A stretch of 64,000 nucleotides of DNA from Chara braunii (Eukaryota > Plantae > Charophyceae). The stretch's first letter is position 1; each line of letters opens with the position of its first letter. A program made the translations under genes and the position numbers. The stretch covers positions 850,453 to 914,452 of the forward strand of contig BFEA01000035.1 of the NCBI GenBank assembly GCA_003427395.1, given 5' to 3'. Under the pieces are notes generated by a model. It worked only from the letters and a program-made list of their open reading frames with translations, was not told where the DNA came from and searched no databases. Positions 2,141-59,614 of the stretch are shown in pieces.

Positions 2141-2722
2141 GTAGTTAAAAATGAAAATGTACTTGGCACATGCCACAGCACAGTGCATTCCTTTTCTCCT
2201 TTCTATCCCTACACTTGCGGCAATTGCTAATGTGAGAAATCTGGGCATCCGTTCGCGATCCTACCGGGCCGACGCGCGATCTTAAGATTTCGAAATCGTG
2301 CGGCAACCCAGGTCGTTCGCGGTTCCTACCGGGCCACGACCAGGATCGATGCGCGATCTTAAGATTTTAAGATCGCGTGATGATCCGGGCCATTGGCCAA
2401 TCGCCCAGATCAGAAGTTCTCAGCCCAATGGAAGTTAGGGCGGCCAGGCCTGGGAAAAAAACGGTTCTGGGTGGGCTGATCCCCGATTGGGTGCAGCAGT
2501 TCGGCCCTTTTCCCACACATGTCTTTGGCGGCGCATAGTGGGCGGACACACGCACGCGGTGTATAGCGGACAAGACAACATGCACTCACACGGACGCCCG
2601 CCTGCCCACCCACTCAAGTACACTTACAAACACACACACCCACACACCCACACACCCACACACCCACACACCCACACACCCCACACACACACATGCACGC
2701 ATGCACGCAAATGCATTGTGGG

Positions 2723-2779
2723 CAGATTGTCAGGGTTCAACCTCCTGATGAGTTGGTGAAAGTCCAACAAAACAGTATG
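2723..2779 (+). ncRNA. Type III hammerhead ribozyme (GAAA mutated to AAAA)
   Basis: cagatt-GTC, stem I (aGGGT tca ACCtc), CTGATGA, stem II (GTTGG tgaaagt CCAAC), aAAAC, then stem III partner agtatg. Confidence 0.8.
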
Positions 2780-3191
2780 GCACAGTCATGTTTTTTCTTT
2801 TATGGAGTTGCACGCGCGCTAGAGAGCAAGAGTGCGTGCACGCAAATGCATTGTGGGCAGANNNNNNNNNNNNNNNNNNNNNNNNNNNNNNNNNNNNNNN
2901 NNNNNNNNNNNNNNNNNNNNNNNNNNNNNNNNNNNNNNNNNNNNNNNNNNNNNNNNNNNNNNNNNNNNNNNNNNNNNNNNNNNNNNNNNNNNNNNNNNNN
3001 NNNNNNNNNNNNNNNNNNNNNNNNNNNNNNNNNNNNNNNNNNNNNNNNNNNNNNNNNNNNNNNNNNNNNNNNNNNNNNNNNNNNNNNNNNNNNNNNNNNN
3101 NNNNNNNNNNNNNNNNNNNNNNNNNNNNNNNNNNNNNNNNNNNNNNNNNNNNNNNNNNNNNNNNNNNNNNNNNNNNNNNNNNNNNNNNNNN

Positions 3192-3268
<77 letters not shown>

Positions 3269-3478
3269 GAGACGGCTAAGGGGGGAGGGTAGGGAGAAGT
3301 CAGTGGGTGGGTGGGGTAAAGGCATACCACATGGTGCAATTTTTGTGTTTTGTTTTCCGTTTTTTGTGCAATAGAAAAAGGCATTGGTGGCATGCCGCCC
3401 TTTTTTTTTTTTTTTTTGAAGAAAGTCTCCTCGTTAGGAGAGGTGCTAAGAGCACCCCCTCCTAGCGAGAATCCTGGA

Positions 3479-3540
3479 TGCTCCAGTCTATTTATTGGTG
3501 GGGAGCAGCACTTGCTGGAAAATGGGTCCAGCGTCCCATT
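3479..3540 (-). repeat. About 60-nt structured interspersed motif (family C); other copies at 15642, 18400, 28190, 28388 (opposite strand) and 33527
   Basis: Plus-strand consensus gctcca(g)tctattggtggggagcagcacctgctggaaa.cgggtccagcgtccc. Confidence 0.9.
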
Positions 3541-10933: not shown

Positions 10934-13900
10934 TGTTTGTTTGTTTGTTTGTTTGTTTGTTTGTTTTTTCCCCCGAAACAGAACCTTACGGTTCTGGCTC
11001 CTTTTCCATCCTGGGGAGCATCAGTCCGGTTCCTATTCCCCCGGCAATTCAGAAAAGCTTACAAAATGTACCCACTCACGCTCCTCCCCCTTGTGGCTGG
11101 AAGGCCCGAAAGACGGCATTGAGTGCTTCTGGAGGGAAGGATGTACCATCTTTCACCTCTGCCTAAGTTAGCCTGTTCTACTACTCTGTTATCCTAGCTT
11201 ACTAGTCCGACTGTCTCGCTGTCTTTGAAATAGGTGGCTTATTTGTCTTGGCCCCGTTCAGCCTATTCATGCCAGTACCTTAGCTGTCCCAATATCTCTA
11301 GACGTCAGAACTGTTGATAAGACCCTTTGGTGGAAGCGTATGTTGAGCTCTGATCGCTCTGTGATTTGTCTGATGTGATCTCCACGCCCTAGTAGGTACG
11401 AATATGGAATTGCAGATCTTGTCCTGTTCTGATTCTGGCACTGTGTAGTCTAATCATCTCTCCTCTCTGGATGTAGCTTATTGTAGTTAGTCATTGGTGT
11501 GTGTTTGCAGTATTTAGTAGAGCTTGGATACCTATTTCGTCACTAATCGCTCCTCTCNGGTGTATAGCTGTCGATTTTGCGTGCGTGTCTAGAGCATACT
11601 GCGGCTGTTGATCNCTGTTGGTTTCACTACCTCCCCCAGAACTTNGGGGTTTCTTTTCTCCAGGGTTGTCTGCTGTCTGGGCTTGTGTGTGNTCATACCT
11701 GTCTTCTATCCTAGTTCTGCCTNTTTCCGTCTTTTTACGTATGTTTCTGTGTTTCTCCGGTCTAAAGCCTTAAACCCTCTACGGTNTCTTTCTCTGGGGT
11801 TTTNTAGTCTTCTAGCTTTTATTTTTCGGGTTTGATTGAAGTTAGGCTCCTCCTTCACTTTTATCTGCTATGGGTTTGTCTNGTTTATCTGGCTAGCTAG
11901 GGCAGTGGCGGTGTGTTCTACTGTTTTTTGGTTTTTGCTCTGTTTGCTNTTTTTCTGTCTTCCGTATCCTGTGCTTGGTTAATTAGANTTCGGAAAGGGT
12001 AATCTCTTCTTCCTCTCTACTGTCTAAGGTATTACATGTGTGTTCTTGAGCGATCTGGGAGTCCTCCCATAATGTGAATACTATTTCCTTCCCCTTTTAG
12101 TTTTCCAATCTTTCCGTTGGCCAGTACCAGGTCTTCAAATCTTAGTCTATGCTCTATTGCTTTATCTTCTTCTTTTTCCATTTTTAGTTTAGTTCTTTTC
12201 CATTGTATGCGGTAGTCGGTTTCTATCTGTATTTGGATGAGGGGCCAAGCTTCTCTTGTGTGCATTGGTGTCTTGCCCAGGGTTTCTTGGCACCGTTTTT
12301 TCCATATGTTCCATAAAAGGGCCTTACGTAGGCTCCCACCAAGAATGGATTCGGTGNGGGACCATGAGTCAGGCTNGTCCTGTCCCGTCAGCCAAAACAG
12401 AGGGTCATCTGGGAATGGTTTGTTTNTGACTCTCCGCCAAGTATCTTCGGCCAGCTGCCATAGTTGTTTAACTCTTTGGCAGAGCAGGAAGCNATGGAGA
12501 ATGTCCNCTTTCTTTTCTTCCCTACAGTTGGCACATAGTTCATTCAGGGTGTTTCTATCCTGCATTCTTCGTCTGGGGTTGAGCCATACGTTTGTTGGGA
12601 CCGCGAGATACCAGATTAGCCACTGGAGGCTCCTGAAGCCTGGTGGTCTGAGTGCTGTCAGCTTTCCCCATGGAATGTCCGTGAAGTGTTTGTGATCCAC
12701 TTCTACGTGTTTCCACCATCGTCCGGCTATTACTGTGTCAGCTGGTTCCAACCTTTTCCTCAGTCTGTACCCTAGTCTCGTAGTATAGTCCAGTAGGTTG
12801 GTTCTCCGACTCAGTCGTAGCCTTCCTTGTCTGAGATTCCAGGCCCATTCTGCTGGGTCTACTTCTTATTTTTCTTAGTAAATCTCTTTTTATTGGGGTC
12901 ATTTCTAGGTCCTGTAATGGGGTCAGAGGGTGATAAATGATTAAGGATTCTTGCTCCACTACTCTTATTTTTCTTAGTAAATCTCTTTTTATTACTACTT
13001 GGGATTCTGGCTTGTTTGACAGGTTACAAAAGTCTGTTCCTGGATCTTTTATTTCATGGGACGAGAAGCGAAGCCAATTGGATCTGCCGTCCTCTATGTC
13101 CTCATAGTGAAAGGCTTGGAGTGGTATTTCAGAGTCTTTGAGAACCGCCCATTCACCGGGTTTCCATAGGAAGTCTTTCCGTAGTAACTCGGACCATTCG
13201 TGCGGTATTGAGTCATGTACTGCTTGTAGGTTCCTTGCCAGGTTATGGCAACCCTTTAGTTTCCGTCTTAGTTGTGCTTCTGTCATCCACTCTCTTGATG
13301 TGTCATTCCAGATGTGTTTGATTTGCCATACTCCTTTTTCGAGCCAGTTGCCCCATTTGGTGTCTTTAGAGGTTGGGGTGAAGGGTATCCCTTCTGAATT
13401 GACTATGTCTGGATTGCAGAAGAGGGGTTGCCTTAGTACTTCTTCTTTGTTGGTTGGTCTTCTGACCTTTGCAGGGAAGATTTCCTTCCATGCGTTGTAT
13501 TGTTCCTGCCAGAAAATTAGGCGTGAGTTCAATCTTGAGGTAGACCTCTCTGTTCTTGTTGTTTTCATGGCCCAGGATTTACTCGCTAGCCAGAAGGAAC
13601 CTGACATATTGTCTGGAGAAGTGAAGGCTGGCAGTTGCTTAAATCTTTCTAGGGCTAGCGGTCTCCATGGGAGGCTCGGGGGAGAGATCAGCTTAAGGAT
13701 CCATTTCGCTTGTAAGGCCTTAATTTGTAGTGGAGGATCAATGATTCCTAGACCTCCTTCTTGCTTTTTGGCTGTGACGTGCTGCCAGGCTACTTTGCAG
13801 ATGAAGTTGGTTCTGGTCGGGTTTCCGGTCCACAGGTAGGCCGATGCCTTCCTCTTCAGTAGTTTAAAAGCTTCTTCCTCTGGGGTCCAGAAGGATGCTA

Positions 13901-14243
13901 CGTACCACATCATTGAGAAAACTGAAGTGTTGAGTACTAGCGCTCTTCCGAATAAGGAGGTGTGGACCTTCGTCCAGTCGTCTAGTCTGTCTGTCATTTT
14001 AGCTAGGAGGCTGGCTGCCATGTTGTTCATTGTGCCCTGGTCTGAGACTTGTAAGCCTAGGAAACGCAATGGGTCACTTAGTTCAGCCCACAGTAAGCCC
14101 TCCGGTGTGGAGTGTGGTTTGTCTATTGTTTCTTCTGCTAGCCACCAACCTATCGTCTTTTGCCAGTTGACTTTCATTTCAGATGCTAGCTGGAATGCCT
14201 GCATGGTTCTTGTGAGTGCTTCGAAGGATGAGTTAGAATAATC
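10934..14243 (-). mobile_element. 5'-truncated L1/Tx1-like LINE (ORF2 C-terminal half, 3' UTR, (CAAA)n tail)
   Basis: ORFs 12738-14399 and 12032-12751 contain KVNWQKT, SLFGRALVLN, KKQEGGLGI, QPLFCNP and zf-RVT-like CANC...H.FLLC. The (tttg)n tract at 10934-10963 is the likely tail. Confidence 0.9.
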
Positions 14244-15528
14244 TGTTTCTTTATTGGCTGATTGCTTGAAATTTCCTTGCTTACTTTGGATATGAGGACG
14301 GATGAATGTGTGGCATATGCACCCTTGTGATTCAGGTTGCGGGATGCGACTCGCGGCATTTGCATGGGCACATGCTAGGCTGGCGCGACTTAGGACCATT
14401 CACACACCCCTTTGGACCGAAACATGGTAGGGACTACAGACGCTTACCTCTCCTGAAATTGGAGACACTGCCTGTTTCATTCCAAGGGTTGCGTCCATGG
14501 CAACCCTGAAATTGGAGACCCTGCCTGCTTCAGTCCAAAGGTTGTGCCCATGGTGGTTGTATGCGGGGGGTGGAGTGGCGGGAGGGATACCTGGGTGTTC
14601 AGTACATGGGCTGTTGTGCGGACACTGCTGCTTCTGGCAGGGCGAGGGGGAGGGGGGGGAAGGGGAGGGGGAGTATTTATTCAATAGGGTATGGTGTGTC
14701 GGGGTCTTCTTATACAACTTAGGCTCTAGAACTATCCTTAATTGAGTCTGGGCACTATGGTGTTGCCACCATTAGTAGTAAAGAGGGTGTGGTAGCGTCA
14801 GTTCAGGCCTGTATAGGGCATCCGTGTAGGCTTATAGGGATGTTGGGAGCATGGAGTGGGTGTGGCAGAGAGAGGATTGGAGGCTTATATGAACGTATGA
14901 CACCCCACGGCTGAGTAGGAAGGAAGCATCTTACGATAATGAAGGGCTGAAGCTTCAAGGGTAGTTCCGAGGAGAGGAACCATGTTGGCACTGGATGGAG
15001 TGGAGAGGGGTGTTGGTGTACAGGGAGGAGGGAGGGGCGGTAAATCGCATCAGGTATGTTGCCTGGAGTCTGCTTGATGGAACAGGGGGATGCACCTTGT
15101 AGGGGTAGAGCCAGTCGATCCAGGGGCTGTTTTCTATAACTTTTCTCTTCTTATATCCGCGTGCTCCCGAAACTCTTTCATTACCCTGCTGACTGGTCGT
15201 CCCCGGTGTTCGAGGGCGTCCTAATATGGCTTCGGGGCGGGGGGAGTATTTGTGAGGCTTTGGTAGGCAGGGCTTGCAATAGGAGTTACATAAAATCGAT
15301 GATCGTATCGATTAGAGGTAGAGTGGGTGTATGGTGATGTATCTGGTAACCAAATGGATAAGCTAGCGAAGGGAGCTTCCAAGTCTGAGTCCGACGTCGG
15401 CAACAGCCTCGGTGTCTGAAAGAAGGAATAAAATCGTGGATTGCAGTTGGAGTTACTGGCCTCCATGCTTTGCTCCAATGCGTTGGCCAAATTTTGCGAG
15501 CCTTGATGACAACACATGTTATTTTTAT

Positions 15529-15560
<32 letters not shown>

Positions 15561-17716
15561 CCCCCGAAAGTGCCCTTGCGAAAGCCCTCTATCCCAGCGG
15601 TGGTGAGAGAACTGTCAGAATTGAGGGCTTATTTGTCAGGCTGCTCCATCTATTGGTGGGGAGCGGCACCTGCTGGAAACCGGGCCCAGCGTCCCATTGA
15701 AACATCTTGTGATGCAGTGTTTGCTTGTTTGTTTTCCTAGGGCTGTGGACGTTTCTCTTCTCAACCTGGGGCTCCATTTTCCCCTGGAGCTGCTGATATC
15801 ACCCATCCCATCTTGGAGCACCCTTGTCTAATGAGCCAGCCCTGTTCTGCAGCCCGCCTGTTCGTTGTGGCTATGCGTTGTCCCTTTTACACCCTATTAC
15901 ACCCTAAACCCTCGCTGAACCCATGCATAAAACCCACGCAATCCGTAAAGCCTATCACTGTGATGGCAGCGCATTCTGGACAACCAGGTATGATGGGTGT
16001 TGGATCCAGGCACCACGTACCGTTCTTCTCGGTTTGGACGGGGGCACCTCGGCGGGGTGAGATGAGGGCGCAGAGTACCTGGGCGGGGCGAGATGAGGAT
16101 GCAAAGTACCTGCGCAAATGCAAAGATGAGGGTGCAGAGCACCTGGGCAGGGCGAGCTGGGTCCACATACCATGTTCCATTGCATGGAGGCACAGAGAAC
16201 CTGCACGGGGTGAAATGGGGGCGTAGAGCACCTGGGCGTGGCGAGATGGAGGCAAAGGGGAAGATAAAGAATACTTGGTTGCCATTTTGTTGCTCGCCCC
16301 CATATTTCCAGGGAGGGGGAAGGGGAGGAGTATGGAGAGGGCGACACAGGGATATGGTGACAGATGCCCAATGTTTTTGCTTCGAGCACTAACGACAGTC
16401 GACACAGGGGTATGGTGAGGGTTTTGCATTTGACCTCTCTGGACTCTTTCCCCAAAGAATGTGCTTTGTTTTGCTGCTAGGAATTCTTAATGGACCACTG
16501 GAACATCCCATCCCCGTGCCCCGCGTACATTGAACCCGACGAACACATCATCTCTAAGTGTCCATGACTCCTACCGGAGAGCATTCCCGTCTCTACGTAG
16601 TACATTCACATGCTTTCGCAAGAGCCAGACAAATATGGTCTCGAAGTCCCGCATAGACCTCATCCTGCTATCAGAGGAACTGCAAGAGGCCCTGCAGATA
16701 CCAGAGACAGTCCAACTCAGCCCGCTCCCTGGTTTGGACCATGCAATGTGTGTAGCGATCCTATCGTTTAGGAGAAAACCAGACCAGGGCAAGGGATCCT
16801 AAACACATCCCTGTTGAACCTGGAAAGGTTCAAAGAGTATCATCAGAGACACCTAATCCAGGACGACATACTTTGGGCTATAGCATACCTAAGCCGCAAG
16901 TGTAATGGATATTCTAAACTACTAGCAGCCCAGTGCCATGCAACAGAAACATACATACACCAACGACTGCGACACCTGGAGCAACGGGAAACTGACACTG
17001 CAGATGCAGACTCACTGCAGGAACTCGCCAAAGAAACCCGGGACCTGGAGGACCAACTTTTCACGCACATGGGACGCCGCTGGCGGGGTTGCATGCGTTC
17101 GAGGCAAGCTCAGGCGTCGCCAAATGGAGGGAACAATGAACGCTCAACTATTTGCAATGGCCGAAGTTAGAACTGAGATATCAGTCATAGAGGCCCAACT
17201 GACCCCAAACAACCTCATGGCCCACTCGTTACCTCCAGGACGGAATGCACACAGATAGCCAGAGAATTCTACAAGGAACTCTTCGCCTTTGAATGTGGCC
17301 AAAAACCCGAACACCAAAAAACAAAAGAAACTGAAGACTTCCGTCTTCCACTAAGTCGTTCCCTCACAGAGTAGCAAAATGACCTGCTGGAGCATCCTCT
17401 CACCAAAGACGAGATCTGGACAGCCCTTATGCTGATGGAAGACAAGAAGACCCCGGGCATAGATGGCCTTCCAAAAGAATTCTGGGAAACGTTCTTGGAC
17501 TTCCTCGCGGAGGATGTAATGGACATCTATCACATAGTATGGGCATCCAGGAGGGTTGGAGAATTCACGGGACAGGGTGTGTTGACCCTGCTCTACAAAA
17601 AAAGGGACATGAAAAATACACGGAACTATTGCCCCATCACCCTCCTAACTGTGGTCTACAAGATGGTGGCAAACCGTCGGACAAAAGTCATAGCAGACAT
17701 AATACACCCGGCACAG

Positions 17717-18111: not shown

Positions 18112-21100
18112 GGGGTCCGCGATCGGCAGGGATGCAACCCTGCATGATAAAATTTTACTCGTGAACAGGGATGCAACCCTGCATGATAACATTTTACTCG
18201 TGAACAAACTCATAAAGCTGTCTCACCAGTCTAAGGATAATGCAACCTTCTTATTCATAGACTTTGAAAAGACCTATGATCATGTAGACTGGCTTTTTTT
18301 TAGATAAATGCCTGGAGAAATTCACTTTGCCCCTGCGATCGCCGATGGGTAAGGATTCTTTTCTTTTCTTTTATTTATTTATCTATTTATTTATTTAAAG
18401 GGAGCAGCACCTGCTGGAAAACGGTTCCAGCGTCCCTTGACATTCAAAGTGTTTGTTATGGAGATATCTGAGCTCCTATGGGCAAGCCACGAGTCCTTCC
18501 CGCTAATCTTCAAACCCGACACGTTTGCTCACTAAACACCCGATGGGCAGCATTGATTGCCTTCAACTGAGGGGATTAACTGCCCATCCATATCCGAAGT
18601 CATATCCCTACTCTAAATTCCTCATCATCTACCACATGAATCGTAAACCTACCTATGAGGAAGAGAGGTAATCAGCCATAGGGAAGATAGAGAATCAGTT
18701 AACGCTACCCCCCATCGAAACCATCATCCGTTAATCTTTGCCTACTCTGAAGCACGTTATCAGACAGACAAGAGAAAAAGTAAACCAACCGCACCTCGAT
18801 CGATGAACAGGAGGGGTAATCAGTTGAGGCCGCAGTTCATACTAATTCGTCTCCAAAAAAAAGGGCAAATAGAGAAATCATCGCCGAGCAGCCATGTGGC
18901 AATTTACGACATATTCCTGCTTCCTCGCCACCTGCTCGATCGTGTAAACTAAAAAAACGCATAAGGCTTGGGTTACCACCACGCAACCCCACGAGGGCAC
19001 GATAAGACAAAACTTTCACGCGTTGCCTTGTGCGACCCAATCATCCCGAGCAACCCTATCCCACCCTTACTCGCCTGCATCCAACTTCCTGCTTCGCCAC
19101 ACAATCTTTCTGTATCCCAAGCCTTCCCATCACCCACCCCTCACGCCCAAAGCCCTGATCAACCTTCACAAAAGACCAGCGAAGAGAGGAGAAAATGTGA
19201 AAGAAGAGGATACTGCACGCAAACGCCGCAACACGCGTAATGGTCAGTGGCAACCTGACCCCCCCCTATCTCCTTGCAATGTTCGGAATGACAAGGAGAC
19301 CCAATCGCCCCCTGCCTCTTCGTCATCATCATGGAGGCACTGACTGCCAACCTGAGAACACACAAGGACATCAAAAGAATCCAGGTGGCTTCAATCCCAG
19401 AAGAGGCCATCCCGGTCTGCTCGCTGTTCGCAGACCACTGGCCCCTCATGGTGGAGGCAACAAAAGATAACCTTAGATTCTGTGCAGTATCAAATACGAA
19501 GATTAACTGAGGCAACAAAACCCTTGGATTGTGGATCCACCACCACGGGGTTAGACCCCCTGAACTCCCTAGAGTTAAATGGTTACCCGCATAGGCCCCC
19601 ATCCGTATTTTGGGGGTCGCTCTGAGAGCATACGACAAACCAACTACCAACAATGAATGAATATCTCAGCTGGCACTTGCAAAGCTGGCATCATGGAAGA
19701 ACACGCACACATCCCTCCTGGGTCGGGTGCTCGTGATAAATAATGTGGTCCCCGCATCTCTCTGGTATAGATCTGAGATCTGGGCTTTGGATAAAGCCGC
19801 TCTCCGGCCACTCCAGAGGCAAGCAACAACATACTTATGGAGAGGCAATCAAAAAAGCACTAGTGGTACAATGGATCAAGAGACTAATCTTCAATCCACA
19901 TACCCCATGGGCACCCTTGGCAGTAGAGCAAATAATAACGCAATTAGCCCTCGCCACCCCGGCTGACACATACCCAATGACGTGGTTGGAAAATAGGTCA
20001 TGGCCAATCCCACGAGGAAGCACCCACCACCCGGCCCAACCATGTGCATCTGACGCCAGGCAGCGAGGGAGGACATCTAGAGGGACCTGTTCTGGCCCTC
20101 CATTGTATGAATGCCCCTGGCGAGGATGGGTGAAAAGAGGAGTGACCAGGATAGGAAACATATGGGACCAGACGGCCAACGACTGGCACAACCCAGAAGC
20201 CATTCGAACAAGGCTGCGCTATTGCCACCATTCGACCGCAGCGCTAGAAGAAATGCTGGAAATAACCCCCCTAGATTGGATTCGGATCCTGCAAAAAGGC
20301 CCCAACTTGTTGGACAGCGATTGGGTGGCCATCTGAGGGAGGCGTTAATGGGTTGCCAGCGTAGTTCACATACACCTGTGTGGGGAATCCCTACTCAGTC
20401 TATACAGATTGGGGCAGGACAACAAACTACAAAAACCCAAGCCGGTGTCGAGCGCACCGGCCCCCGCACGAGCGAGGGCCCTCCCGACCGCGTCACGCAG
20501 GAGAAACTTAGGCTTTCAACCTTTCAGAGACAACTCGGGGACGACACGGTAACCCGCGTCGACCCTTCGCCGCTCTGGCCGAGTGCGCAAGCTGTACATC
20601 TCGCGGTCCCCTACGACAGGATAGGATCTCGCGGGGCACAACTTACCTTCCCTAAGGGGTTGTCACCACCCTTAGGGGCGTATCCCCGCCGAGCTACCGA
20701 CCCACATGTGAAGGCTTTTATAATGCAATTGCAGAGGTAGGCCGGCCGAGGGCGTTTGCTTGCTCGTTGTAGCATAGGTACGCATGGTTGAACGCCAAAG
20801 TGAGCCCGAACGTCGTCCATCCCTGGGACGCTGATCTCCCAGTAATCAGAACGTACGCCGGTCGACTAGGACGTGATTATTCCAAGCGTACCTAGTCCCT
20901 TCTTTCAAAGACAATGAAGAGTTGAACAAACAAAATGTTTTCAAAAGAAAATTAAGGTCAATGTAAGTTGACTTATCTTCTGAATCAACATATATACAAT
21001 ACACTCATGCATCCGACAAAGGTCGACTTGACTTCAAAACAACGCTTACCAACAAAAGATCAAAGCATGACCTATACACAATGCGACACTCAAATGACGT

Positions 21101-23740: not shown

Positions 23741-24002
23741 AACAAGCGCCCGTACCCGGCCGTAAGGAGAGCCAGGTTCGGGCGTGCCGTTAACAGCTGC
23801 AGCCCGTTCCAAAACGAACGGGCGCAGTTGAACAGCGCCACAAAACAAATGAGAAGGGGGGGGGGAACTCAACAAAAAAGAAGGAAAAAAAAAGGAAATA
23901 AAAAAACAAAATAAACAGACTGCCGTCACCTTACCAACGCGAACCCACCCGAATGTAGCTGCAAAGCGCAGCAAATACATTCGGGATATGTCCATCCGTG
24001 GA

Positions 24003-24051
24003 CGGACTGTCGGGGCTCAGCCCCCTGATGAGTCGGTGGAAGTCCAGTCTG
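24003..24051 (+). ncRNA. Second hammerhead copy with an 8-nt deletion removing GAAAC
   Basis: cggact-GTC, GGGGC tca GCCCC, CTGATGA, GTCGG tggaagt CC[deleted], agtctg. Aligns with 2723-2783 including the downstream tggcac. Confidence 0.7.
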
Positions 24052-24562
24052 GCACTTCAAGTCTCCCCGTTCGTTTGAAACGAACGGGTATTCCAACCGA
24101 GAAAAGAAGAAAAAAAAATTAGGAAAAAAAGAAAAATCTAAAACACAATATAAGAAAAAGAAAGAAAAATAAACAACAACAAAACCCCCTATCTAACGTG
24201 GCTGCCCGTTTTCAACGGGTGCCTGACACAATACTGGGAACGTTTAAGTGTCTAGTCACTCCGAATCGGGCCAGATGGCGCCCCGTTTTCCTCTACCCTT
24301 TTTTTTTTACCTTTTTTTTTTTCTCTCCCTTTTTTTCCCCAACGACTGCTTCTCGCCGCGCCGTTTCGTCTTAGTGGCCCAAAACAGACAAAACAAAAGA
24401 AAAAGAAAAAAAAAGAAAAGGAAACAACTTACCTCGCGATGTTGCAATCTTTACAAAGCCCGTATCTGGGCGCTTACACGTCCAGATGAGAGGTAGGTGA
24501 TTTTTTTTTTTTTCCTCCCCTTCTCTTTTTTTTTCCTTTTTTTTCAAAAAAAAAAAAGTTCG

Positions 24563-24608
24563 AAACTCGGACCATTCCTCGATTCACGCGTGTCATCCTT
24601 GCGCAGGG
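24563..24608 (-). pseudogene. U6 snRNA 3'-half fragment
   Basis: Minus strand CCCTGCGCAAGGATGACACGCGTGAATCGAGGAATGGTCCGAGTTT matches the plant U6 3' end. The ACAGAGA box and 5' half are absent. Confidence 0.85.
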
Positions 24609-26837
24609 TCAAGTCACCCGCGCGGCCGATTTCAGCCGTACGATCTGGTAGATCGCACGGTCGAAATTGACCGCCTCGCATCAAGGAGCTGGGCCGCTCC
24701 TATCAAAAGGAGCTTGCCCAGTCATATCCACAAGGTGACAGTCTAGCAGCGATACCTAATAGGTTAGCTCCTTCTCACATAAGGAGAGGAGCGACCCTTC
24801 TATATGAAGGGCTTCGGCGCCCAGCAGGCCCCCCCCTCCAGCGCTTAGCAGTTTATGCCTGCTAAGCCCGCTTGTTACAGCGGCTGGCTGGCTGGGTTGG
24901 CGGCCGACGGCCTTATCAGCCGCACTACTCAGCCGGCCCTCACGCCGTCACCCCCGGTCCTCGGCGCAAAAAGCCCCGCGGACCCTAAAACTAACTATCC
25001 CTTCACGCAGCGGTCCAAACCTCGTCGCTGCGACTCCTTTTTATCCCGCTTAGGCCCTGAATCGCGCGGCTGTTACCTTATTATAGGTAGATTAGGTTTA
25101 ATTTTAACATTCCCATCTCCGCGCGTCCCTACAGCGTACGACAAGGACGAAGCCTAGCCATTCACATCCGCTTCTTCTGGACGTCACACGCGTCCAAACC
25201 AGAATCCGAAAACCTTTAATCTTCCAGTCATAGGTCAAGTCATAATAACTTTGGCAATGTCAGTCTCATCAAGTCGCTCAACGAAAAAAGTCCGACAGTG
25301 TCTGACCTTGAAAAACTCGGGCAGAAACACTCACAGTGGTTTTTGTCCCGACACCGGAAGTGACAGAATGAATCCTAGACAAACTATTCTTTCGAAATAA
25401 AGTCCTACAACCCAAAGTTGAATGACTGGCTTTCAAACCAGACACACCAATCTCCAACCTCCCCTTCGATCCTATTAACTGGACCTGGTCTACCCCAACA
25501 GGAAACGGGAGGTCATACCCTATTTGTTAAATTCACCTATAGAATGCTAAGCCAAAGGACCAACCTCAGGGATCAGGTGGAGGACAGATGGATGAGACAT
25601 TTAAATGTTAGCGAGGCGACACTGCAACCAATCAGATGGTTCCAAACGATACGAGCTAAACCAACCAAAGTGGCCTCCCTGCAATGACAGATAGACCATC
25701 GTTGCCTCCCAACTAACGAATGGATCATAGACAGATCCTCACTCGAAGAGAAAGGACTAGCCCTTCCCAGGTGCAGATTCTGTTCCACGGCTTCCCAGCC
25801 AGAGACACCCTGGAGACAAGTGACGACATCTTTCTACAATGCCCCAGAGCGGTCTGGCTATGGAGGTGCTGGGACAGAATATGGAGTCAACTTGGCACTT
25901 GCTGTCCATGGCCTAGGGACCGGAGAGCCCTCCTCTACGAAGCATGGCACAGGCCCAGTTAGACACCTTCTCACAAAATCTGTTCAAAACAGGACACCGA
26001 GCACTTCTATGGGCCCTGTGCTGGAGACAGTGTACTCACGACATGGAAAATGTCAGGCTGGATGGACCAGAATTCACAGACACTATCAAGCAACAGGTAC
26101 AAGCCCACATCACCTTGCAGTGGCAACTAGTGAAAACCCCGATCTCCACACTCCACTCCACAAAAGAAGTGATACAGAATATCCAACGATTCAATGGTAA
26201 CTGGCTTGGGGGCGCAAATGGGGGGAAGCTGGGGACAGTGAAATGGAGTCCACCACAAGGCGGAGAACAGGGGAAGGATGGCAGGAAACACCAGCTCTGC
26301 TTTCACGAATGGACCACACTGGACCCAGCGATCCCACTTCGGCCGCCATCGGACTTCCCAGACCCATTCCTGCCATCATCGATGAGCCTGGTAGAGCAGA
26401 ACTTTTTTGGATTATTAGAAATATGTGGGGAAAGTTTGAAGATGCAGGGCTACGGTCGGCAAGTGGGCAGTTTCTTAAAAAAGCAGAGACAGGGTGCAGC
26501 CGGGGATTCTAGAAAATCAGACAAGGAAAGGTACATCATAGGGTTTAGGGGTTTGGGTACAACTAAGAACGCTGGGGACGAGAGGGTAGGGCTTAAGGCT
26601 TCGGAGACCGAACAACGCAGAGGTCACATGGTAAAGGGTCACAGCTTGGAGACAGACAAAGAGGCAAATGACACAGCACCAGAGCAGATGGATGTCATTT
26701 GGCGTCCTGATTAAGGGTGAAGAGTCTTAGCGAACATCTGCAAGGTACTCCAGAAGCTGAAGTAGCTTAAGCACCCACTCACTTCTCACCTGCTCAGTCG
26801 ATCCCCTGGGTGCAGGGTAATCAATGCTGACAGGAAT

Positions 26838-28172: not shown

Positions 28173-28690
28173 TCCTCTCTCCGAACAAATGCTCCAGTCT
28201 ATTCGTGGGGAGCAGCACGTGCTGGGAACCGGGACCAGCGTCCCATATCGAATTATACAGATCATTGAGAACATTTGAGGTCTTTTGAGGTCATTTGAGA
28301 TACCGGGGCCATTACCCGGCTTCGGCTGAGAACAAACTGTGAAACAGAGGTCCTACGAAATCTATGTTCCCAGACTCTCATATGTGCATGGGACGCTGGA
28401 CCAGTTTTCCAGCAGGTGTTGCTCCCCACCAATAGACTGCCAGTGGTGCAACCGGTCAGTCCGCTAGGAGGGGATGCACCTCTCCTAGTGGGAGTGACCA
28501 GTTTGAAAAAGAAAAAGAAAAAAGAAGGAATTCTTAAATGCAACCTGCTTTCCTGGAGTGACTAGACATTTGCTCTGTTTAAATCACTCGAAGTTCCTAG
28601 AACGGTTCCCACCTCCGATCATGCATCCGAGTCGGGCTGGCAGCTCCTGGCAGTTGTGCACCCATGCTGATTTACCTTCTTGTGGCAACT

Positions 28691-29483
28691 ACATCGAAGG
28701 ATCAAAAAGCAACTTTGCTGCGAACGCTTGGCGTCGACGAGCCAGTTATCCCTGTGGTAACTTTTCAGACACCACTAGCTTCGAGTCCCGACATGCTTAA
28801 ATCGCGAGTACACCACCCAGGCAAACTTGAGAATGAAAAATGAGTCATTCCGAAAAGGTTCGATGAACGGTGCACCAGAACAGAATGGCTGGCGGCGCCA
28901 GCCAAATGAAAAAATAAGCGTCGAGCTGGTGCTTCGGCCAAGCTTGGCACGCAGGGGGAATCCGCCTCGGCAAAAAGAAGCTTGTATGTACTGGTGTAAG
29001 GACTGATAGGGCATGCTCTCACAGTTTGTATCCTTCCTTACTGGAAATGAAAATCAAATGAGCTTTTGCCTTTTTGCTCCACAGGAGATTTCTGTTTGCG
29101 TTGAGCTCAGCTTACTAGGACACACAAGAAAAAAGGCAGCTTAGGGCACCTTTCTTATCGTCTAACGGATGTTCACCCTAGCCCAACTCCCCACCTGATA
29201 ATGTCTTTAACTTGGATTGGACAGGCCATGCGGGCCTGCACCTTGGATTGAGAAGCAGGGGCAAAGCCCCAGCTCCGCCTCACGAAATGAAGTCATGTCA
29301 GAAGTAGTGGTATACTATTTCACTTGCGCTGTAAAAAAGCTCCGACTTATTCTACACCTCTCAAATCATTTCACAGAGTCGAACTAGAGTCAAGCTCAAC
29401 GAAGGGGTCTTTCCTGGCCAGTTTTTTTTCCCAAGCCTGTATGTCCTCTTGGCTGTGATTTCGCCGGATGGTAGATAGGGACC
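28691..29483 (-). pseudogene. Degenerate nuclear 25S/28S rDNA fragment, interrupted
   Basis: Reverse complements of conserved LSU segments in the correct order (acatcgaaggatcaaaaagc, gccagttatccctgtggtaactttt, aactccccacctga, ctagagtcaagctcaac, gtagatagggac), with many indels. Confidence 0.92.
28809..28998. mobile_element. About 190-bp MITE-like insertion in the rDNA fragment
   Basis: TA-CACCA...TGGTG-TA ends; internal sequence recurs at about 31970-32055 (cagaat.gct.gcggcgccagcca...aagcttggc). Confidence 0.6.
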
Positions 29484-33485: not shown

Positions 33486-34058
33486 CTGCTGCTGGTAGAA
33501 GCAGGCAGCACTAACACCCAGGAGAGGCTCCATCTATTGGTGGGGAGCATCACCTGCTGGAAATCGGGTCCAGCGTCCCTTTTTTTTTTTTTTTTTTTCC
33601 TTTCTAGAACGAATCAGGAAAATGTCGGGAAATATAACCGAGTAAAACACCTGCCAGCATTGATTACTCTGTCGTCCAGAGGATTGACTGTGCAGGTTGT
33701 TGGGAAAAGGGAAAAAAACTCTTCGCCCGGTACCAGGCGCCAGATACCTGCTGCTGAGAAACTAATTCCTCCCTCTCCCAAAAAACTCTTCCACCTAATC
33801 CCCCACTATCAATCCCTCTGTTCCACTCGATATCGGCTGGCAGCTTTGTGCGGACACATTAGATCCTCTGCCACCCTGCCCCCGTAAAATTATGCTTGCT
33901 TTTCTGTCCACTCATAGTCCTGCCACCTTCATCCGCTGCCTGTTTGTCGTTTGGTTATCATCTGCTTATGCTGCACACTAAGATGATGCATTACGTTCTA
34001 CTAACTGCTCAGTGGAGATTTCATCTTCCCTCATCACAACGTGTAGAAACATTTGCAG

Positions 34059-44176: not shown

Positions 44177-45842
44177 AATCCGAAAAAAAACTATGTTATG
44201 CAGAAAAATAAACTGAACAACTTTTGCCTCAGGGTCACATCGAAATATTCTTCACCAAATTTAGAATAAAAATTAAAATTTAAAAATATTTTTTTATTTT
44301 TATATTTTTATTTATTTTTGGCCCGGCCGGGCCACTCTGGTATAGCCTAGAAGTTATGTGATATGTGACTCGTCATCTGAGGGTACACTCACACTCGCAC
44401 TTCCAAGAATGCATCCGACTGAAACTATGGCCAGACCGGGATGACTCCGACTGCAATCACGTCCAGCGCTTTGTCAAAAAAGTCCCGATTGCGACGACGT
44501 CCTGATTCCCAGGATATCCAAGCAGGCACACGCCATGCAAGGGAACTCTGACAACGACTTATCCCGCAACTATCATAGCAAAGCCCTGATAGGAACGGAG
44601 GAGACGCAGTTGCTTCTGATAAGAGTGACATTCACACTTTCCAGAATGCATCTGACTGAAATTACGGCCAGACCTGGATGAATCTGACTGCAATCACGTC
44701 CAGAGCTATGTCCTGATTCCTATGATATCCAAGGAAACAAACACATACTAAGCACAACAGACCTTCCGATAGGAAAGTCCAAACACAGTGGCTTAAAGTA
44801 CACAGGCTTTTCTTTTTCTTTCCCTGTTCCTGAGCACCACGGGATCAGAAATTAAACTGATCAGAACAGAAACTACAAACATGTGAGTTAACAACAAAAG
44901 GAACAGATGGTTCACTCTATCTTAGCCCAAAGGCTGACAGATGTGAAAAAAAATGCTAGTTCACATGTGCAGACAGACGGCCGACCATACCATTCACCCG
45001 CCCGCCAGAGAGCATTAAGCGCAAGGAGATCTCTTTTGTCATGGCTGATGTATGTCGGTCCATCCCTCAGTCTGTCAGCCTGCCTGCCTGCCTGCCTGCT
45101 TACCCGCCCGCAACCCCACCTGGTCACCCGGAACGCAATGGCACCAATCTTTTCCCATTTTCCTCTGTGTGGAGTTTGCAAGTGCAGGTGTTAGTTAGTG
45201 CCACAGAGTGCCCGAGAAATGGTACCGTCTTCCCCCATCCACCAGCCCATCCACTCGCTCACCTGGAATGCAATGGCTCCGATCTTCCCATTTTCCTCTC
45301 TCCGGAGAGGCTGCAATCGTACTGTCTTCCCCCCAGCACAACACACCTGTGTAATGAATGCATACAAGCTAAATTTTTTCCAGCAGTTGTCACGAGTTGT
45401 TCCAACTCTGAAACAGGGTGTAGATTTCCTTCTCTTTTTCAATGCCATCCTCTTCCCTGTTTAGCATTCCTTCCCTCACCCATCCACAGCTACCATACAC
45501 GCCATCCCTTCCAATTAACATCCACCACCCTTTGTAACATTTCTCCACCAGTCCACTCGTTCCACCCCTGTCTCCATTAGGCTGCTCCTTATCCCACCCA
45601 TCTTTCCACCAATCTCCCACCTTATATGTCCTCCCACTTACATCCTCCCTGCTTGACTGACAGTGGTGTTCCATTTGTTTGCCCAGGCTAAAGAAACCAC
45701 ATAGCTTCAAACATGACAGGCTGCTAACAGAACTCTTCATGGAGGGCAGGAGAAGAAGATATCCCTTGAGTGAATGAAGCAGTTAAAAGGGAGGGAAAAT
45801 GCAAGCGATGATGGGCTCGAGAGAATCCTACCTAATGCTAAC

Positions 45843-53589: not shown

Positions 53590-55231
53590 GGAACATTGTG
53601 CAACGTATGCACAGAATGCACACACCACATATTGCTCAGGAAGCAAAAGATCCAAAAAAGAAAAGGAAAAAAGAACACTCAAACCAACAATATGTGCTAG
53701 GCGGTTTCACATATGGAGGCTGGTATATGATATTCAACAGACCCTCACCCCCACCCCCCGACACCTTGATTGTCCCTGAGTCCAACATACTTTTCTTTTT
53801 CTGTTATATAAATATCATGCGGCCGCACTAGTGGATCCGATATTAAACTGACCAGAACCGATATTACAAATTGATCTTAGTAAAAAGGCCCCGAAAGGTC
53901 ATACGCTGTCTCTAATGCATATGGCTTTCTGTGGCCGATGATTTTCGAGTGTGACTTGGAAGTTGTGAGATGAAATCGGTCCAAAATCCACACAGACATT
54001 GTCCAGTGTCATACGTTTTGGTCCAAGTCTAGATTCGAGTCCCATATCTTGTCTTAGAGGGGTCTGAGAAAGTCCTGGGGTCACAGGTATAGGGTCCAGG
54101 GTCGAACGGAGCAACCCGTGTGCCGCCACGTCGAGCTCTTACGTTACGACCCTTTTTCCCCGTTGTTCTCCTTCTTTGGCCACTCTAATCCTCGTCTCTG
54201 TATCGCTCCAATTCGTTCATGGATGTCCCCAAGGAACTTATTGTACTTTTCCCTTAGTTTGGAACACCTTACCCACACGTGATCTCGGAAGCTACTGCTG
54301 ATTTCCTCTAACAATCCTTGGCACCCCTTACTCGTGTTACTTAAACCGGTGCGCAGTGCCCAAGTACTGGTGGTTTAATGGACTCTCACTGAGACTCACA
54401 TACTGTCTCTGGTGCATACGGCTTTCCGTGTGCAACGACTTCTGAGCGACTTGAAACACATAAACCTGTGTATCACACCTCTCCTAGCACCTGCATCCTG
54501 CCTCCATGTTCTTCTCTTTCACATGTACGTGCACCTGCTGGACAGCGAAGGAAGCCGAGGCCGGTTCGGCTTGTTTTCCTATTTTGTGAATTATTTTTCA
54601 AGTTTCAACTTTCATGATTTTTATTCACCCACTGTTCTCGCTCAGTTGGTACACCCATGAACTGTTGAAAATTGAAATACAGACCACAAGTAACATACCT
54701 GTCAATTTACCTGCAGGCCGGGGCCTATGAGCTACTCCCCTACAGCACGTCCTTGTACAATACTCAAGGCCCTAGGCTGAATAGCAGGAGCAACTTTTAA
54801 GTGTCAAAGATGATATCATCTCAAGGCCGTCGTGTTTCTTAAAAATAAAAGAAGAAAAAAAAAACGTTTTCTCTAAGACTTCTTGACTGTTCTTCCTCAG
54901 CATCTTTTAGCACACTGCACAGCACTCGATACGAGCTGGACACAAAGAACTCTTCCCAGTCCGGTCAAAAACAATTGCACGGCACACAGTGCACACTGGG
55001 CATGAAGAACTCTTAAGCGTCTTCACACGAATAGAATGCAAGGTCATTATGGCAGTATTTGGGGCAATTTCAGAGTAGACACAGTGATAATGACTGTACA
55101 GTGTACAGCCTATTCTGGTGAAGAAGAGAGTCTGTGCAAAACAACTTATTGAGGGCCGTGGATGCGATAATGTGCCCTCAGGTACAGCATTCCACTACCG
55201 ATACGACATGGTGTAGATGCGCAATACCAAC

Positions 55232-59514: not shown

Positions 59515-59614
59515 GACCCGGGACCGGGCGATCTAGCCATGAGCAGGTTGAAGAGAGTCCTAACGGGTCTTGGAGGACCGGACCCACGCATGTGGCAAAA
59601 CAGGGGATGCCTTG
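59515..59614 (+). pseudogene. rrn26: Mitochondrial LSU rRNA (rrn26) fragment, NUMT
   Basis: gacccg...gatctagccatgagcaggttgaagagag...ttggaggaccg.acccacg.atgtggcaaaa..ggggatg is a bacterial-type LSU helix region of plant-mitochondrial form. Confidence 0.75.

What the first reader, a model, noticed from the sequence alone, without database searches (positions are those of the whole stretch)
2702..2861. Type III hammerhead ribozyme inside an apparent 135-bp tandem unit (retrozyme-like)
Seen: GTC (2729-2731), stem I, CTGATGA (2745-2751), perfect stem II GTTGG/CCAAC, AAAAC where GAAAC is expected, and a stem III partner. The two clearest lesions (G to A in GAAA and at the base of stem I) both follow a C and fit CpG-to-CpA decay. 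The 25 nt leading into the ribozyme recur exactly 135 bp later (2837-2861) and run into an N gap. Established: tandem genomic hammerheads self-cleave into monomers or circular RNAs in non-LTR retrozymes, and type III hammerheads occur in plant LTR retrozymes. Inference: this is a decayed member of a very small ribozyme-processed retroelement family in this lineage.
Basis: partly seen in the sequence, partly recalled or inferred. Interest (0 to 1): 0.85.

Follow-up and report, generated by a model that had tools for sequence, protein, structure and literature searches.

The report
Dead hammerhead retroelement copy in Chara
This is a real but broken, shortened copy of a very abundant mobile element of the stonewort alga Chara braunii. 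The element carries a self-cutting hammerhead RNA motif, and the copy sits in a (CA)-type repeat as a partial head-to-tail pair, so it is an ordinary dead copy of an element type partly described already.

Summary
Rfam's Hammerhead_3 model matches 2724-2778 (+) end to end at 34.5 bits. That is below the gathering score of 48.5, with E = 0.0012 for the whole window. The motif is not a chance match. A second, differently broken copy lies at 23971-24055. Reads and contigs of the same organism laid at 80% likeness or more put 2011 DNA contigs on 2708-2800. In those contigs the majority letters restore a canonical type III hammerhead: G12, the G1.1-C2.1 pair, a C-G pair in stem II and an 8-bp helix III. 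All four CpGs of the majority sequence are mutated in this copy, so the CpG-decay reading holds. The 2836|2702 junction of the 135-bp repeat is also present in an independent environmental run, so it is real DNA. Only about 1.2-1.3 units are shown. About 35 nt of each unit is low-copy, microsatellite-like spacer and not element sequence. The best reading is a 5'-truncated, dead copy of the ribozyme-bearing 3' part of a Penelope-like (Chlamys-type) retroelement, or a non-autonomous derivative of one. It is inserted at a (CACACACC)n repeat in a Penelope-style partial tandem. Craig et al. 2021 already report 3' hammerheads, (CA)n targeting and partial tandems for Chara braunii Chlamys elements. 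This scan has met the same family many times on other DNA of this genome. No circular RNA and no expression of this locus was seen.

The parts
2626..2693 (.). (CACACACC)n / (AC)n microsatellite directly upstream; the likely insertion target
   Evidence: TRF period 8, 7.8 copies, 94% matches; sequence
2694..2707 (+). Junction ATGCACGC-ATGCACG. Its last 9 nt recur, with one change, in front of the second unit (2834-2842).
   Evidence: 28-nt match 2699-2726 = 2834-2861, 96.4%
2708..2800 (+). Part homologous to the abundant repeat family: a 5'-truncated element copy that differs from the family majority at 9 of 93 positions, with all 4 majority CpGs lost
   Evidence: Depth profile and 'other letters'; script. 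Family sequences continue upstream of 2708 with a conserved 30-nt stretch that this copy lacks (loose ends).
2723..2731 (+). Helix III 5' strand plus the GUC triplet (2729-2731). The predicted cleavage site lies between 2731 and 2732.
   Evidence: Rfam alignment; pairing list for the majority version
2732..2744 (+). Stem-loop I (5 bp, UCA loop). In this copy the closing pair is an A/C mismatch; the family has G-C.
   Evidence: 2732 A>G in 89% of X4 depth
2745..2751 (+). CUGAUGA catalytic box, intact
   Evidence: no variant of 10% or more at these places in family reads
2752..2768 (+). Stem-loop II (GUUGG UGAAAGU CCAAC). Its U-A pair (2754/2766) replaces the family's C-G pair through two CpG decays.
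   Evidence: 2754 T>C 64%, 2766 A>G 56% in X4
2769..2779 (+). AAAA in place of the GAAA box (G12 to A at 2769), then the helix III 3' strand (2772-2779). A2777 gives a G/A mismatch; the family has C there.
   Evidence: 2769 A>G 90%, 2777 A>C 89% in X4
2801..2836 (+). Low-copy spacer made of microsatellite-like pieces (GCACGCGCGC, GAGAGCAAGAG, GTGCG). It is not part of the abundant family.
   Evidence: X4 summed depth falls from about 240,000 to 46 at 2802 and to 0 from 2814 on
2837..2861 (+). Start of a second unit, identical to 2702-2726 and cut off by the gap
   Evidence: A contig of run X1 covers 2736-2836 with 1 mismatch and shows the joint 2836>2702, with 46 letters on the shorter side.
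2862..3191 (.). 330-N scaffold gap; content unknown
3192..3265 (.). (GA)37 microsatellite on the far side of the gap
23971..24055 (+). Second family copy, from a different sub-type. It keeps the CpGs and a perfect stem I (GGGGC/GCCCC), has a 16-nt insert upstream, and lacks 8 nt (the 3' half of stem II plus the GAAA box).
   Evidence: (RF00008 21.9 bits)

Best explanation
The site is a dead, 5'-truncated copy of a very abundant non-coding repeat of Chara braunii, and the 3' part of that repeat encodes a canonical type III hammerhead ribozyme. Most likely the repeat is the ribozyme-bearing 3' tail (pseudo-LTR region) of a Chlamys-type Penelope-like retroelement, or a non-autonomous derivative that uses that element's enzymes. 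The inferred life cycle of live members has three steps. The element RNA is transcribed, often as read-through or tandem RNA. The hammerhead cuts after GUC and so trims the RNA. The Penelope-like reverse transcriptase and endonuclease then copy the RNA into (CA)n-type microsatellites, often incompletely (5' truncation) and in partial head-to-tail tandems. At this locus such an insertion sits behind (CACACACC)n, starting 24 nt upstream of the cut site, and is followed by a spacer and the start of a second identical unit. After insertion the copy decayed neutrally. All four CpGs mutated, including the catalytic G12 (2769) and the G1.1 pair next to the cut site (2732), so this copy cannot self-cleave at a useful rate. 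What is shown: the motif, membership of the family, the family's intact majority sequence, the CpG decay, the reality of the junction, and transcription of the family. What is inferred: mobilisation by a Penelope-like element, the ribozyme's role in RNA trimming, and the tandem arising at insertion.
For: The RF00008 match covers the full model length. A second copy in the window is broken in another way. Run X4 (the same organism's DNA) lays 2011 contigs on 2708-2800, with summed depth peaking at about 240,000 over CUGAUGA. Its majority letters are G at 2769 (90%), G at 2732 (89%), C at 2727 (96%), C at 2777 (89%), C at 2754 (64%) and G at 2766 (56%). The majority version forms 18 of 18 standard pairs in the hammerhead fold at -21.8 kcal/mol, close to the minimum free energy of -22.2. 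All 4 CpGs of the majority sequence are lost in this copy. Family sequences run on upstream of 2708, so this copy is 5'-truncated. Downstream agreement among family sequences is lost about 15-20 nt after helix III, so the ribozyme lies near the element's 3' end (loose ends). The copy abuts (CACACACC)n, and other expressed copies abut (CA)n close to the cut site (loose end before 2733). The junction 2836|2702 is found in the independent run X1. Organism: the only homologue at E<=1e-10 of the window's LINE-like ORF is a Chara braunii protein. Craig et al. 2021 (PMC8557442) report several matching features for C. braunii Chlamys elements: very high copy number, a canonical 3' hammerhead in Chlamys-2_cBra and in the PLE-X type, (CA)n/(C)n targeting, frequent 5' truncation, partial tandems, and 30-40-bp tails at insertion ends.
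Against: I could not align this family to the published Chlamys-2_cBra or PLE-X consensus, because no supplement is held. No reverse-transcriptase or GIY-YIG ORF lies next to either copy. The Penelope-like link therefore rests on anatomy and literature, not on sequence identity. No pile-up of RNA ends at the predicted cut site and no RNA joints were seen. These were oligo-dT libraries laid on only 168 nt, so this is a weak test. The 135-bp repeat could instead be a later local duplication. The majority letters come from reads chosen for at least 80% likeness to this copy, which biases them towards close relatives.
Confidence: 0.72

Rival explanations
1. A genuine miniature tandem retrozyme. 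The gap hides a longer array of 135-nt units that once produced about 135-nt self-cleaved, circularised RNAs and spread by rolling-circle-like retrotransposition.
For: The head-to-tail junction is real in two independent data sets. A hammerhead in each unit would cut unit-length RNA. The gap (330 N) could hold about 2 more units.
Against: About 42 nt of each 135-nt unit is low-copy spacer that the abundant family does not share, so 135 nt is not the family's unit. Family sequences extend upstream of this copy's start. In X1 only 46 of the contig's 80 letters beyond the junction were laid on the unit, so the second unit may not be a full copy. No RNA read is 99% or more alike to this locus and there are no RNA joints. 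Earlier notes of this scan report head-to-tail pairs of the family with many different spacings (unchecked leads).
Confidence: 0.07
2. The copy has the same identity (a dead family copy), but the 135-bp repeat arose later by local duplication, replication slippage or unequal exchange in a microsatellite-rich spot, and not during retroelement insertion.
For: Both units share the same 5' truncation point and the same minority letter at 2717. The spacer and both flanks are microsatellite-like, which favours slippage.
Against: Partial head-to-tail tandems with short extra tails are the documented signature of Penelope-like insertion (PMC8557442). Sharing the same truncation point is equally expected if both units were copied from one RNA.
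Confidence: 0.2
3. A SINE-like or other non-autonomous element mobilised by a LINE or an LTR retrotransposon rather than by a Penelope-like element. A plant-type LTR retrozyme would be one such case.
For: The hammerhead is type III, as in plant LTR retrozymes. LINE-like ORFs are present in the window. A T-rich run follows the ribozyme.
Against: There is no poly(A) tail on the element strand and no target-site duplication. No LTR of about 350 bp, PBS or PPT is evident around either copy. Insertion at (CA)n with partial tandems is the Chlamys pattern (PMC8557442).
Confidence: 0.1
4. A chance hammerhead-like string plus a contig-end assembly artefact.
For: The Rfam score is below the gathering threshold, and the repeat ends at an N gap.
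Against: There is a second copy in the window. 2011 homologous contigs have an intact core. The junction was recovered from an independent run.
Confidence: 0.01

Closest known systems
Chlamys-type Penelope-like elements of Chara braunii with a canonical 3' hammerhead (Chlamys-2_cBra and the PLE-X type; Craig, Yushenova, Rodriguez, Arkhipova 2021, PMC8557442)
   Same: Same organism. Shared features are very high copy number, a hammerhead close to the 3' end, insertion at (CA)n-type microsatellites, 5' truncation, and partial head-to-tail tandems with short extra tails.
   Different: No ORF accompanies either copy here. I could not check sequence identity with the published consensus. The paper does not state the hammerhead type or describe short non-coding derivatives in the text I could read.
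Animal non-LTR retrozymes (tandem type I hammerhead repeats; Cervera and de la Pena 2020, PMC7229834), recently argued to be non-autonomous derivatives of Penelope-like pseudo-LTRs (Li, Clavereau, Pollet 2026, bioRxiv 10.64898/2026.07.22.740005)
   Same: A short non-coding hammerhead-bearing repeat in head-to-tail arrangement, with a probable dependence on a Penelope-like element.
   Different: The hammerhead here is type III with a stable 8-bp helix III, not type I. The host is an alga, not an animal. There is no regular array and no circular RNA was shown.
Plant LTR retrozymes (Cervera, Urbina, de la Pena 2016, PMC4918200)
   Same: Type III hammerhead, green lineage, non-coding, non-autonomous.
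   Different: There are no LTRs of about 350 bp and no PBS, PPT or 4-bp target duplication. The ribozymes are 135 bp apart rather than 600-1000 bp. Insertion is into a microsatellite.
Rfam RF00008 Hammerhead_3
   Same: Full-length alignment with the same topology; the GUC and CUGAUGA boxes are intact.
   Different: 34.5 bits is under the 48.5 gathering score. G12 is mutated to A. There are mismatches at the base of stem I and in helix III.

Membership tests
Hammerhead ribozyme, type III (RF00008) | Cleavage triplet GUH followed by helix I, with helices I and II capped and helix III open | tested here: met
   GUC at 2729-2731. Stem-loop I is 2732-2744 and stem-loop II is 2752-2768. Helix III pairs 2723-2730 with 2772-2779.
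Hammerhead ribozyme, type III (RF00008) | CUGAUGA box | tested here: met
   2745-2751
Hammerhead ribozyme, type III (RF00008) | GAAA box with G12, the general base in catalysis (established knowledge) | tested here: not met
   This copy has AAAA at 2769-2772. About 90% of family sequences have G at 2769. The family meets this feature; this copy does not.
Hammerhead ribozyme, type III (RF00008) | Score at or above Rfam's gathering threshold (48.5 bits) | tested here: not met
   34.5 bits for copy 1 and 21.9 bits for copy 2.
Hammerhead ribozyme, type III (RF00008) | Self-cleavage activity | not testable with these tools
   No pile-up of RNA ends at 2731/2732 in two oligo-dT RNA runs; this is a weak test.
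Penelope-like element (Chlamys) tail or non-autonomous derivative | Insertion bias for (CA)n/(C)n microsatellites | tested here: met
   The copy abuts (CACACACC)n at 2626-2693. Other family copies abut (CA)n (loose ends).
Penelope-like element (Chlamys) tail or non-autonomous derivative | Frequent 5' truncation and partial head-to-tail tandems (pseudo-LTRs), often with a 30-40-bp tail | tested here: met
   The copy starts at 2708, whereas the family continues at least 30 nt further upstream. The second unit starts at 2837 after a spacer of about 35-42 nt. The junction is confirmed in X1.
Penelope-like element (Chlamys) tail or non-autonomous derivative | Sequence homology to the 3' end or pseudo-LTR of an element encoding GIY-YIG endonuclease and reverse transcriptase | not tested
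No such ORF lies next to either copy.
Plant LTR retrozyme | Two LTRs of about 350 bp, each with a type III hammerhead, flanking a 600-1000-nt non-coding core with PBS and PPT, plus a 4-bp target duplication | tested here: not met
   The repeat period is 135 bp. There is no LTR-sized repeat in the flanks and no target duplication around 2694-2861.
Non-LTR (tandem) retrozyme | Regular tandem array of unit-length monomers (about 170-400 nt), each with a type I hammerhead | tested here: not met
   The hammerhead is type III. Only about 1.2-1.3 units are shown. The unit is part element and part low-copy spacer.
Non-LTR (tandem) retrozyme | Unit-length circular RNA | tested here: inconclusive
   No RNA joints, and no RNA read 99% or more alike to this locus, in X8 and X9. 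Oligo-dT libraries would miss small circles.

The most novel reading that the evidence does not exclude
The gap at 2862-3191 hides further 135-nt units, and the locus is a relic of a miniature type III hammerhead tandem retrozyme. If so, it would be the smallest ribozyme-processed circular-RNA retroelement known and the first tandem (non-LTR) retrozyme of the green lineage. It would link plant type III retrozymes with the Penelope-derived tandem retrozymes of animals.
Probability: 0.07. Interest if true: 0.7.

Novelty: new member of a known kind. Interest (0 to 1): 0.27.

Why it matters
This locus is one more dead copy and matters little by itself. The family behind it is of some interest. It pairs a plant/viroid-style type III hammerhead with stable helices with Penelope-like insertion behaviour, at very high copy number, in a streptophyte alga close to land plants. 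That bears on where plant retrozymes and animal Penelope-derived retrozymes came from. The literature mentions the 3' hammerhead of Chara Chlamys elements only briefly (PMC8557442). A proper description of the short non-coding copies, their 5' ends relative to the cut site, and their RNA would add to it. This copy gives two small data points. A real Penelope-style partial tandem with a spacer of about 40 nt is confirmed in an independent sample. And the loss of every CpG of the ribozyme is a clean example of methylation-driven decay.

Tried and rejected
1. Rfam at gathering thresholds finds no hammerhead in the window. Only the permissive scans show the two sub-threshold matches.
2. A regular-expression search for intact cores (CUGANGA, a stem II of at least 3 bp, then GAAA) found none in the window. 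The other ten CTGATGA strings have no hammerhead context.
3. The single-sequence fold of copy 1 is no better than shuffled sequence (z = 0.11). Thermodynamics alone says nothing here.
4. A scan of JGI metagenome contigs with the family's core-plus-stem-II pattern returned two contigs with an unrelated, full-score type III hammerhead in a prokaryote- or phage-like setting. It returned no Chara family copy.
5. No supplementary files of Craig et al. 2021 are held, so the published Chara hammerhead sequences could not be compared.
6. Pfam scans of 16 ORFs, including those upstream of copy 2, found no reverse transcriptase or GIY-YIG domain. The only match was a weak zf-RVT hit in a LINE-like ORF.
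7. Weak Rfam matches over stem I (mascRNA/tRNA-like, 15.9 bits, E 1.4) and the B-box-like GGTTCAACC string were considered as a Pol III promoter. I rejected this as not significant.
8. The apparently compensatory U-A pair in stem II is not evidence of selection. Two paired CpGs that both decay give a perfect pair in 2 of 4 outcomes and two wobble pairs in 1 of 4.

Full report
**Observation**

The window is a draft eukaryotic assembly with many N gaps, 48.7% G+C and a CpG observed/expected ratio of 0.64.
- GTC is at 2729-2731.
- A 5-bp stem I with a UCA loop is at 2732-2744.
- CTGATGA is at 2745-2751.
- Stem II is GTTGG/CCAAC around a 7-nt loop, at 2752-2768.
- AAAAC is at 2769-2773, followed by a helix III partner.
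- The 25 nt at 2702-2726 recur exactly at 2837-2861, directly before a 330-N gap.

Rfam's Hammerhead_3 model aligns to 2724-2778 over its whole length at 34.5 bits. That is under the gathering score of 48.5. E is 6.7e-6 for the local search and 0.0012 for the whole window.

**The motif is not a chance match**

A second copy lies at 23971-24055 on the same strand. It is 81.6% identical over 49 nt, nearly all of its differences are transitions, and it scores 21.9 bits against RF00008.

Copy 2 keeps the CpGs and has a perfect stem I (GGGGC/GCCCC). It lacks 8 nt, which removes the 3' half of stem II and the GAAA box. The two copies are therefore broken in different ways and together point to an intact ancestor.

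**Family evidence from public reads**

I laid four runs on 2694-2861 at 80% likeness or more. I left out the neighbouring (CA)-type microsatellite on purpose.

Run X4 is the DNA of the same species label, held as contigs.
- It lays 2011 contigs on the stretch.
- Summed depth is about 400 at 2694, about 6,000 at 2712, about 240,000 over CUGAUGA, 46 at 2802, and 0 from 2814 on.
- So 2708-2800 belongs to a very abundant repeat, and 2801-2836 does not.
- The tool warns that summed depth is not a copy number.

The majority letters of the family differ from this copy at nine places:

| Place | This copy | Family majority | Share in X4 |
|---|---|---|---|
| 2769 | A | G | 90% |
| 2732 | A | G | 89% |
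| 2727 | T | C | 96% |
| 2777 | A | C | 89% |
| 2754 | T | C | 64% |
| 2766 | A | G | 56% |
| 2717 | T | C | majority (X1, X4, RNA runs) |
| 2718 | G | C | 47% in X4; majority in X1 and the RNA runs |
| 2791 | T | C | majority (X1, X4, RNA runs) |

With these letters the sequence is a canonical type III hammerhead. It has GUC, then stem I, CUGAUGA, stem II GUCGG/CCGAC, GAAAC, and an 8-bp helix III. All 18 pairs are standard. The ribozyme fold scores -21.8 kcal/mol against a minimum free energy of -22.2 kcal/mol for a competing long hairpin.

The majority sequence has four CpGs, and all four are mutated here to TpG or CpA. They include the catalytic G12 at 2769 and the G1.1 pair next to the cut site at 2732. 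By established knowledge of G12 as the general base, this copy is catalytically dead.

The U-A pair in stem II that looks compensatory is what two paired CpGs give by chance in half of the outcomes. It is not evidence of selection.

**Extent of the element**

Family sequences continue upstream of 2708 with a conserved stretch of 30 nt. This copy instead has ATGCACGC repeats and (CACACACC)n there, so it is 5'-truncated 24 nt before the cut site.

Downstream, family sequences agree through a T-rich run at about 2790-2800 and then scatter. The ribozyme therefore sits about 20 nt from the element's 3' end.

Some expressed copies start next to (CA)n within a base or two of the predicted cut site (loose end before 2733). 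This is only a hint. Earlier notes of this scan make the same claim more strongly, and I did not check them.

**The 135-bp repeat**

Run X1 is labelled a soil metagenome from 2023 and comes from a different study. It has a 181-nt contig that covers 2736-2836 with one mismatch.
- The contig shows the joint 2836>2702 with 46 letters on the shorter side.
- The head-to-tail junction is therefore real DNA in an independent sample, and the second unit runs at least to about the CUG of its own ribozyme.

Each 135-bp unit is about 93 nt of element plus about 42 nt of low-copy, microsatellite-like sequence. So 135 bp is a local period and not the family's unit length. What lies in the gap is unknown.

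**Expression**

Two oligo-dT RNA runs give 463 and 1339 reads over the ribozyme, on both mate orientations.
- None is 99% or more alike to this locus.
- About 95% of the reads run on into unlike sequence.
- There are no joints and no pile-ups of RNA ends.

The family is transcribed from other copies. This locus is not seen in RNA. Circular RNA is neither shown nor excluded.

**Organism and literature**

The window's LINE-like 553-aa ORF has a single homologue at E<=1e-10 in the protein collection, a Chara braunii protein (CBR_g37722). Earlier notes of the scan name the same species.

Craig et al. 2021 (PMC8557442) describe Chlamys-type Penelope-like elements at very high copy number in C. braunii. 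They report:
- a canonical 3' hammerhead in Chlamys-2_cBra and in the PLE-X type;
- targeting of (CA)n and (C)n repeats;
- frequent 5' truncation;
- partial tandems (pseudo-LTRs);
- 30-40-bp tails at insertion ends.

Every one of these features fits this locus. [quoted passage not shown]

I could not align this family to the published consensus, because no supplement is held. I also found no reverse-transcriptase or GIY-YIG ORF beside either copy. The Penelope-like link therefore rests on anatomy and is an inference.

**Verdict**

This is a real, decayed type III hammerhead, but it is an ordinary dead copy of a very abundant family, not of a small one.

The arrangement fits a Penelope-style partial tandem in a microsatellite better than a retrozyme with a 135-nt unit. 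It fails the tests for a plant LTR retrozyme (no LTRs, PBS or PPT) and for an animal-type tandem retrozyme (wrong ribozyme type, no regular array).

The scan has met this family many times before on other DNA of this genome. The literature partly describes it. Interest is low to moderate.

Noticed in passing
L001:8190-8244 (-) and L002:3440-3494 (+): Two JGI metagenome contigs (Ga0114902_1000484, Ga0114903_1000585) carry an identical full-score type III hammerhead (RF00008, 53.6 bits) about 35 nt upstream of an ATG-started ORF, in a prokaryote- or phage-like setting. It shares stem II and its loop with a Chara sub-variant but is otherwise unrelated.
   Followed up: partly
window 28687-29411 (-), 59540-59614 (+), 53787-53901 (-), 44829-44877 (-), 24561-24612 (-): Fragments of non-coding RNA genes are scattered in the window: eukaryotic LSU rRNA (215 bits), a bacterial/organelle-type LSU piece, two U2-like pieces and a U6-like piece (all but the first are below gathering scores). 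They look like retro-copied pieces.
   Followed up: no
window 3400-3540; also 28388-28524 (-), 15645-15699, 28189-28246, 33529-33582, 18388-18436: A separate dispersed short repeat with a hairpin-like core lies just beyond the gap and recurs at least five times in the window at 74-87% identity.
   Followed up: no
window 12032-14399 (-): LINE-like ORFs: 553 aa, plus 239 aa with a weak zf-RVT match. The only homologue at E<=1e-10 is Chara braunii CBR_g37722 (40% identity over 31% of the query).
   Followed up: partly
window 2736-2836 (run X1): A run labelled soil metagenome (2023) holds this single-copy part of the locus with 1 mismatch in 101 nt. Chara braunii or a very close relative was therefore present in that environmental sample.
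   Followed up: no
window 2694-2861 (run X4, joints): A few contigs of the organism's DNA join a family copy cut inside loop II (about 2758-2761) directly to the upstream part of another copy. This gives very short head-to-tail periods of about 55-80 nt, possibly by template switching at a shared GGTGA string.
   Followed up: no
window 2350-2420: Short inverted repeats (gatcgcgcgatcttaagat / atcttaagatcgcg-like) lie upstream of the microsatellite, with a related stretch at 2250-2300. Their nature is unknown.
   Followed up: no
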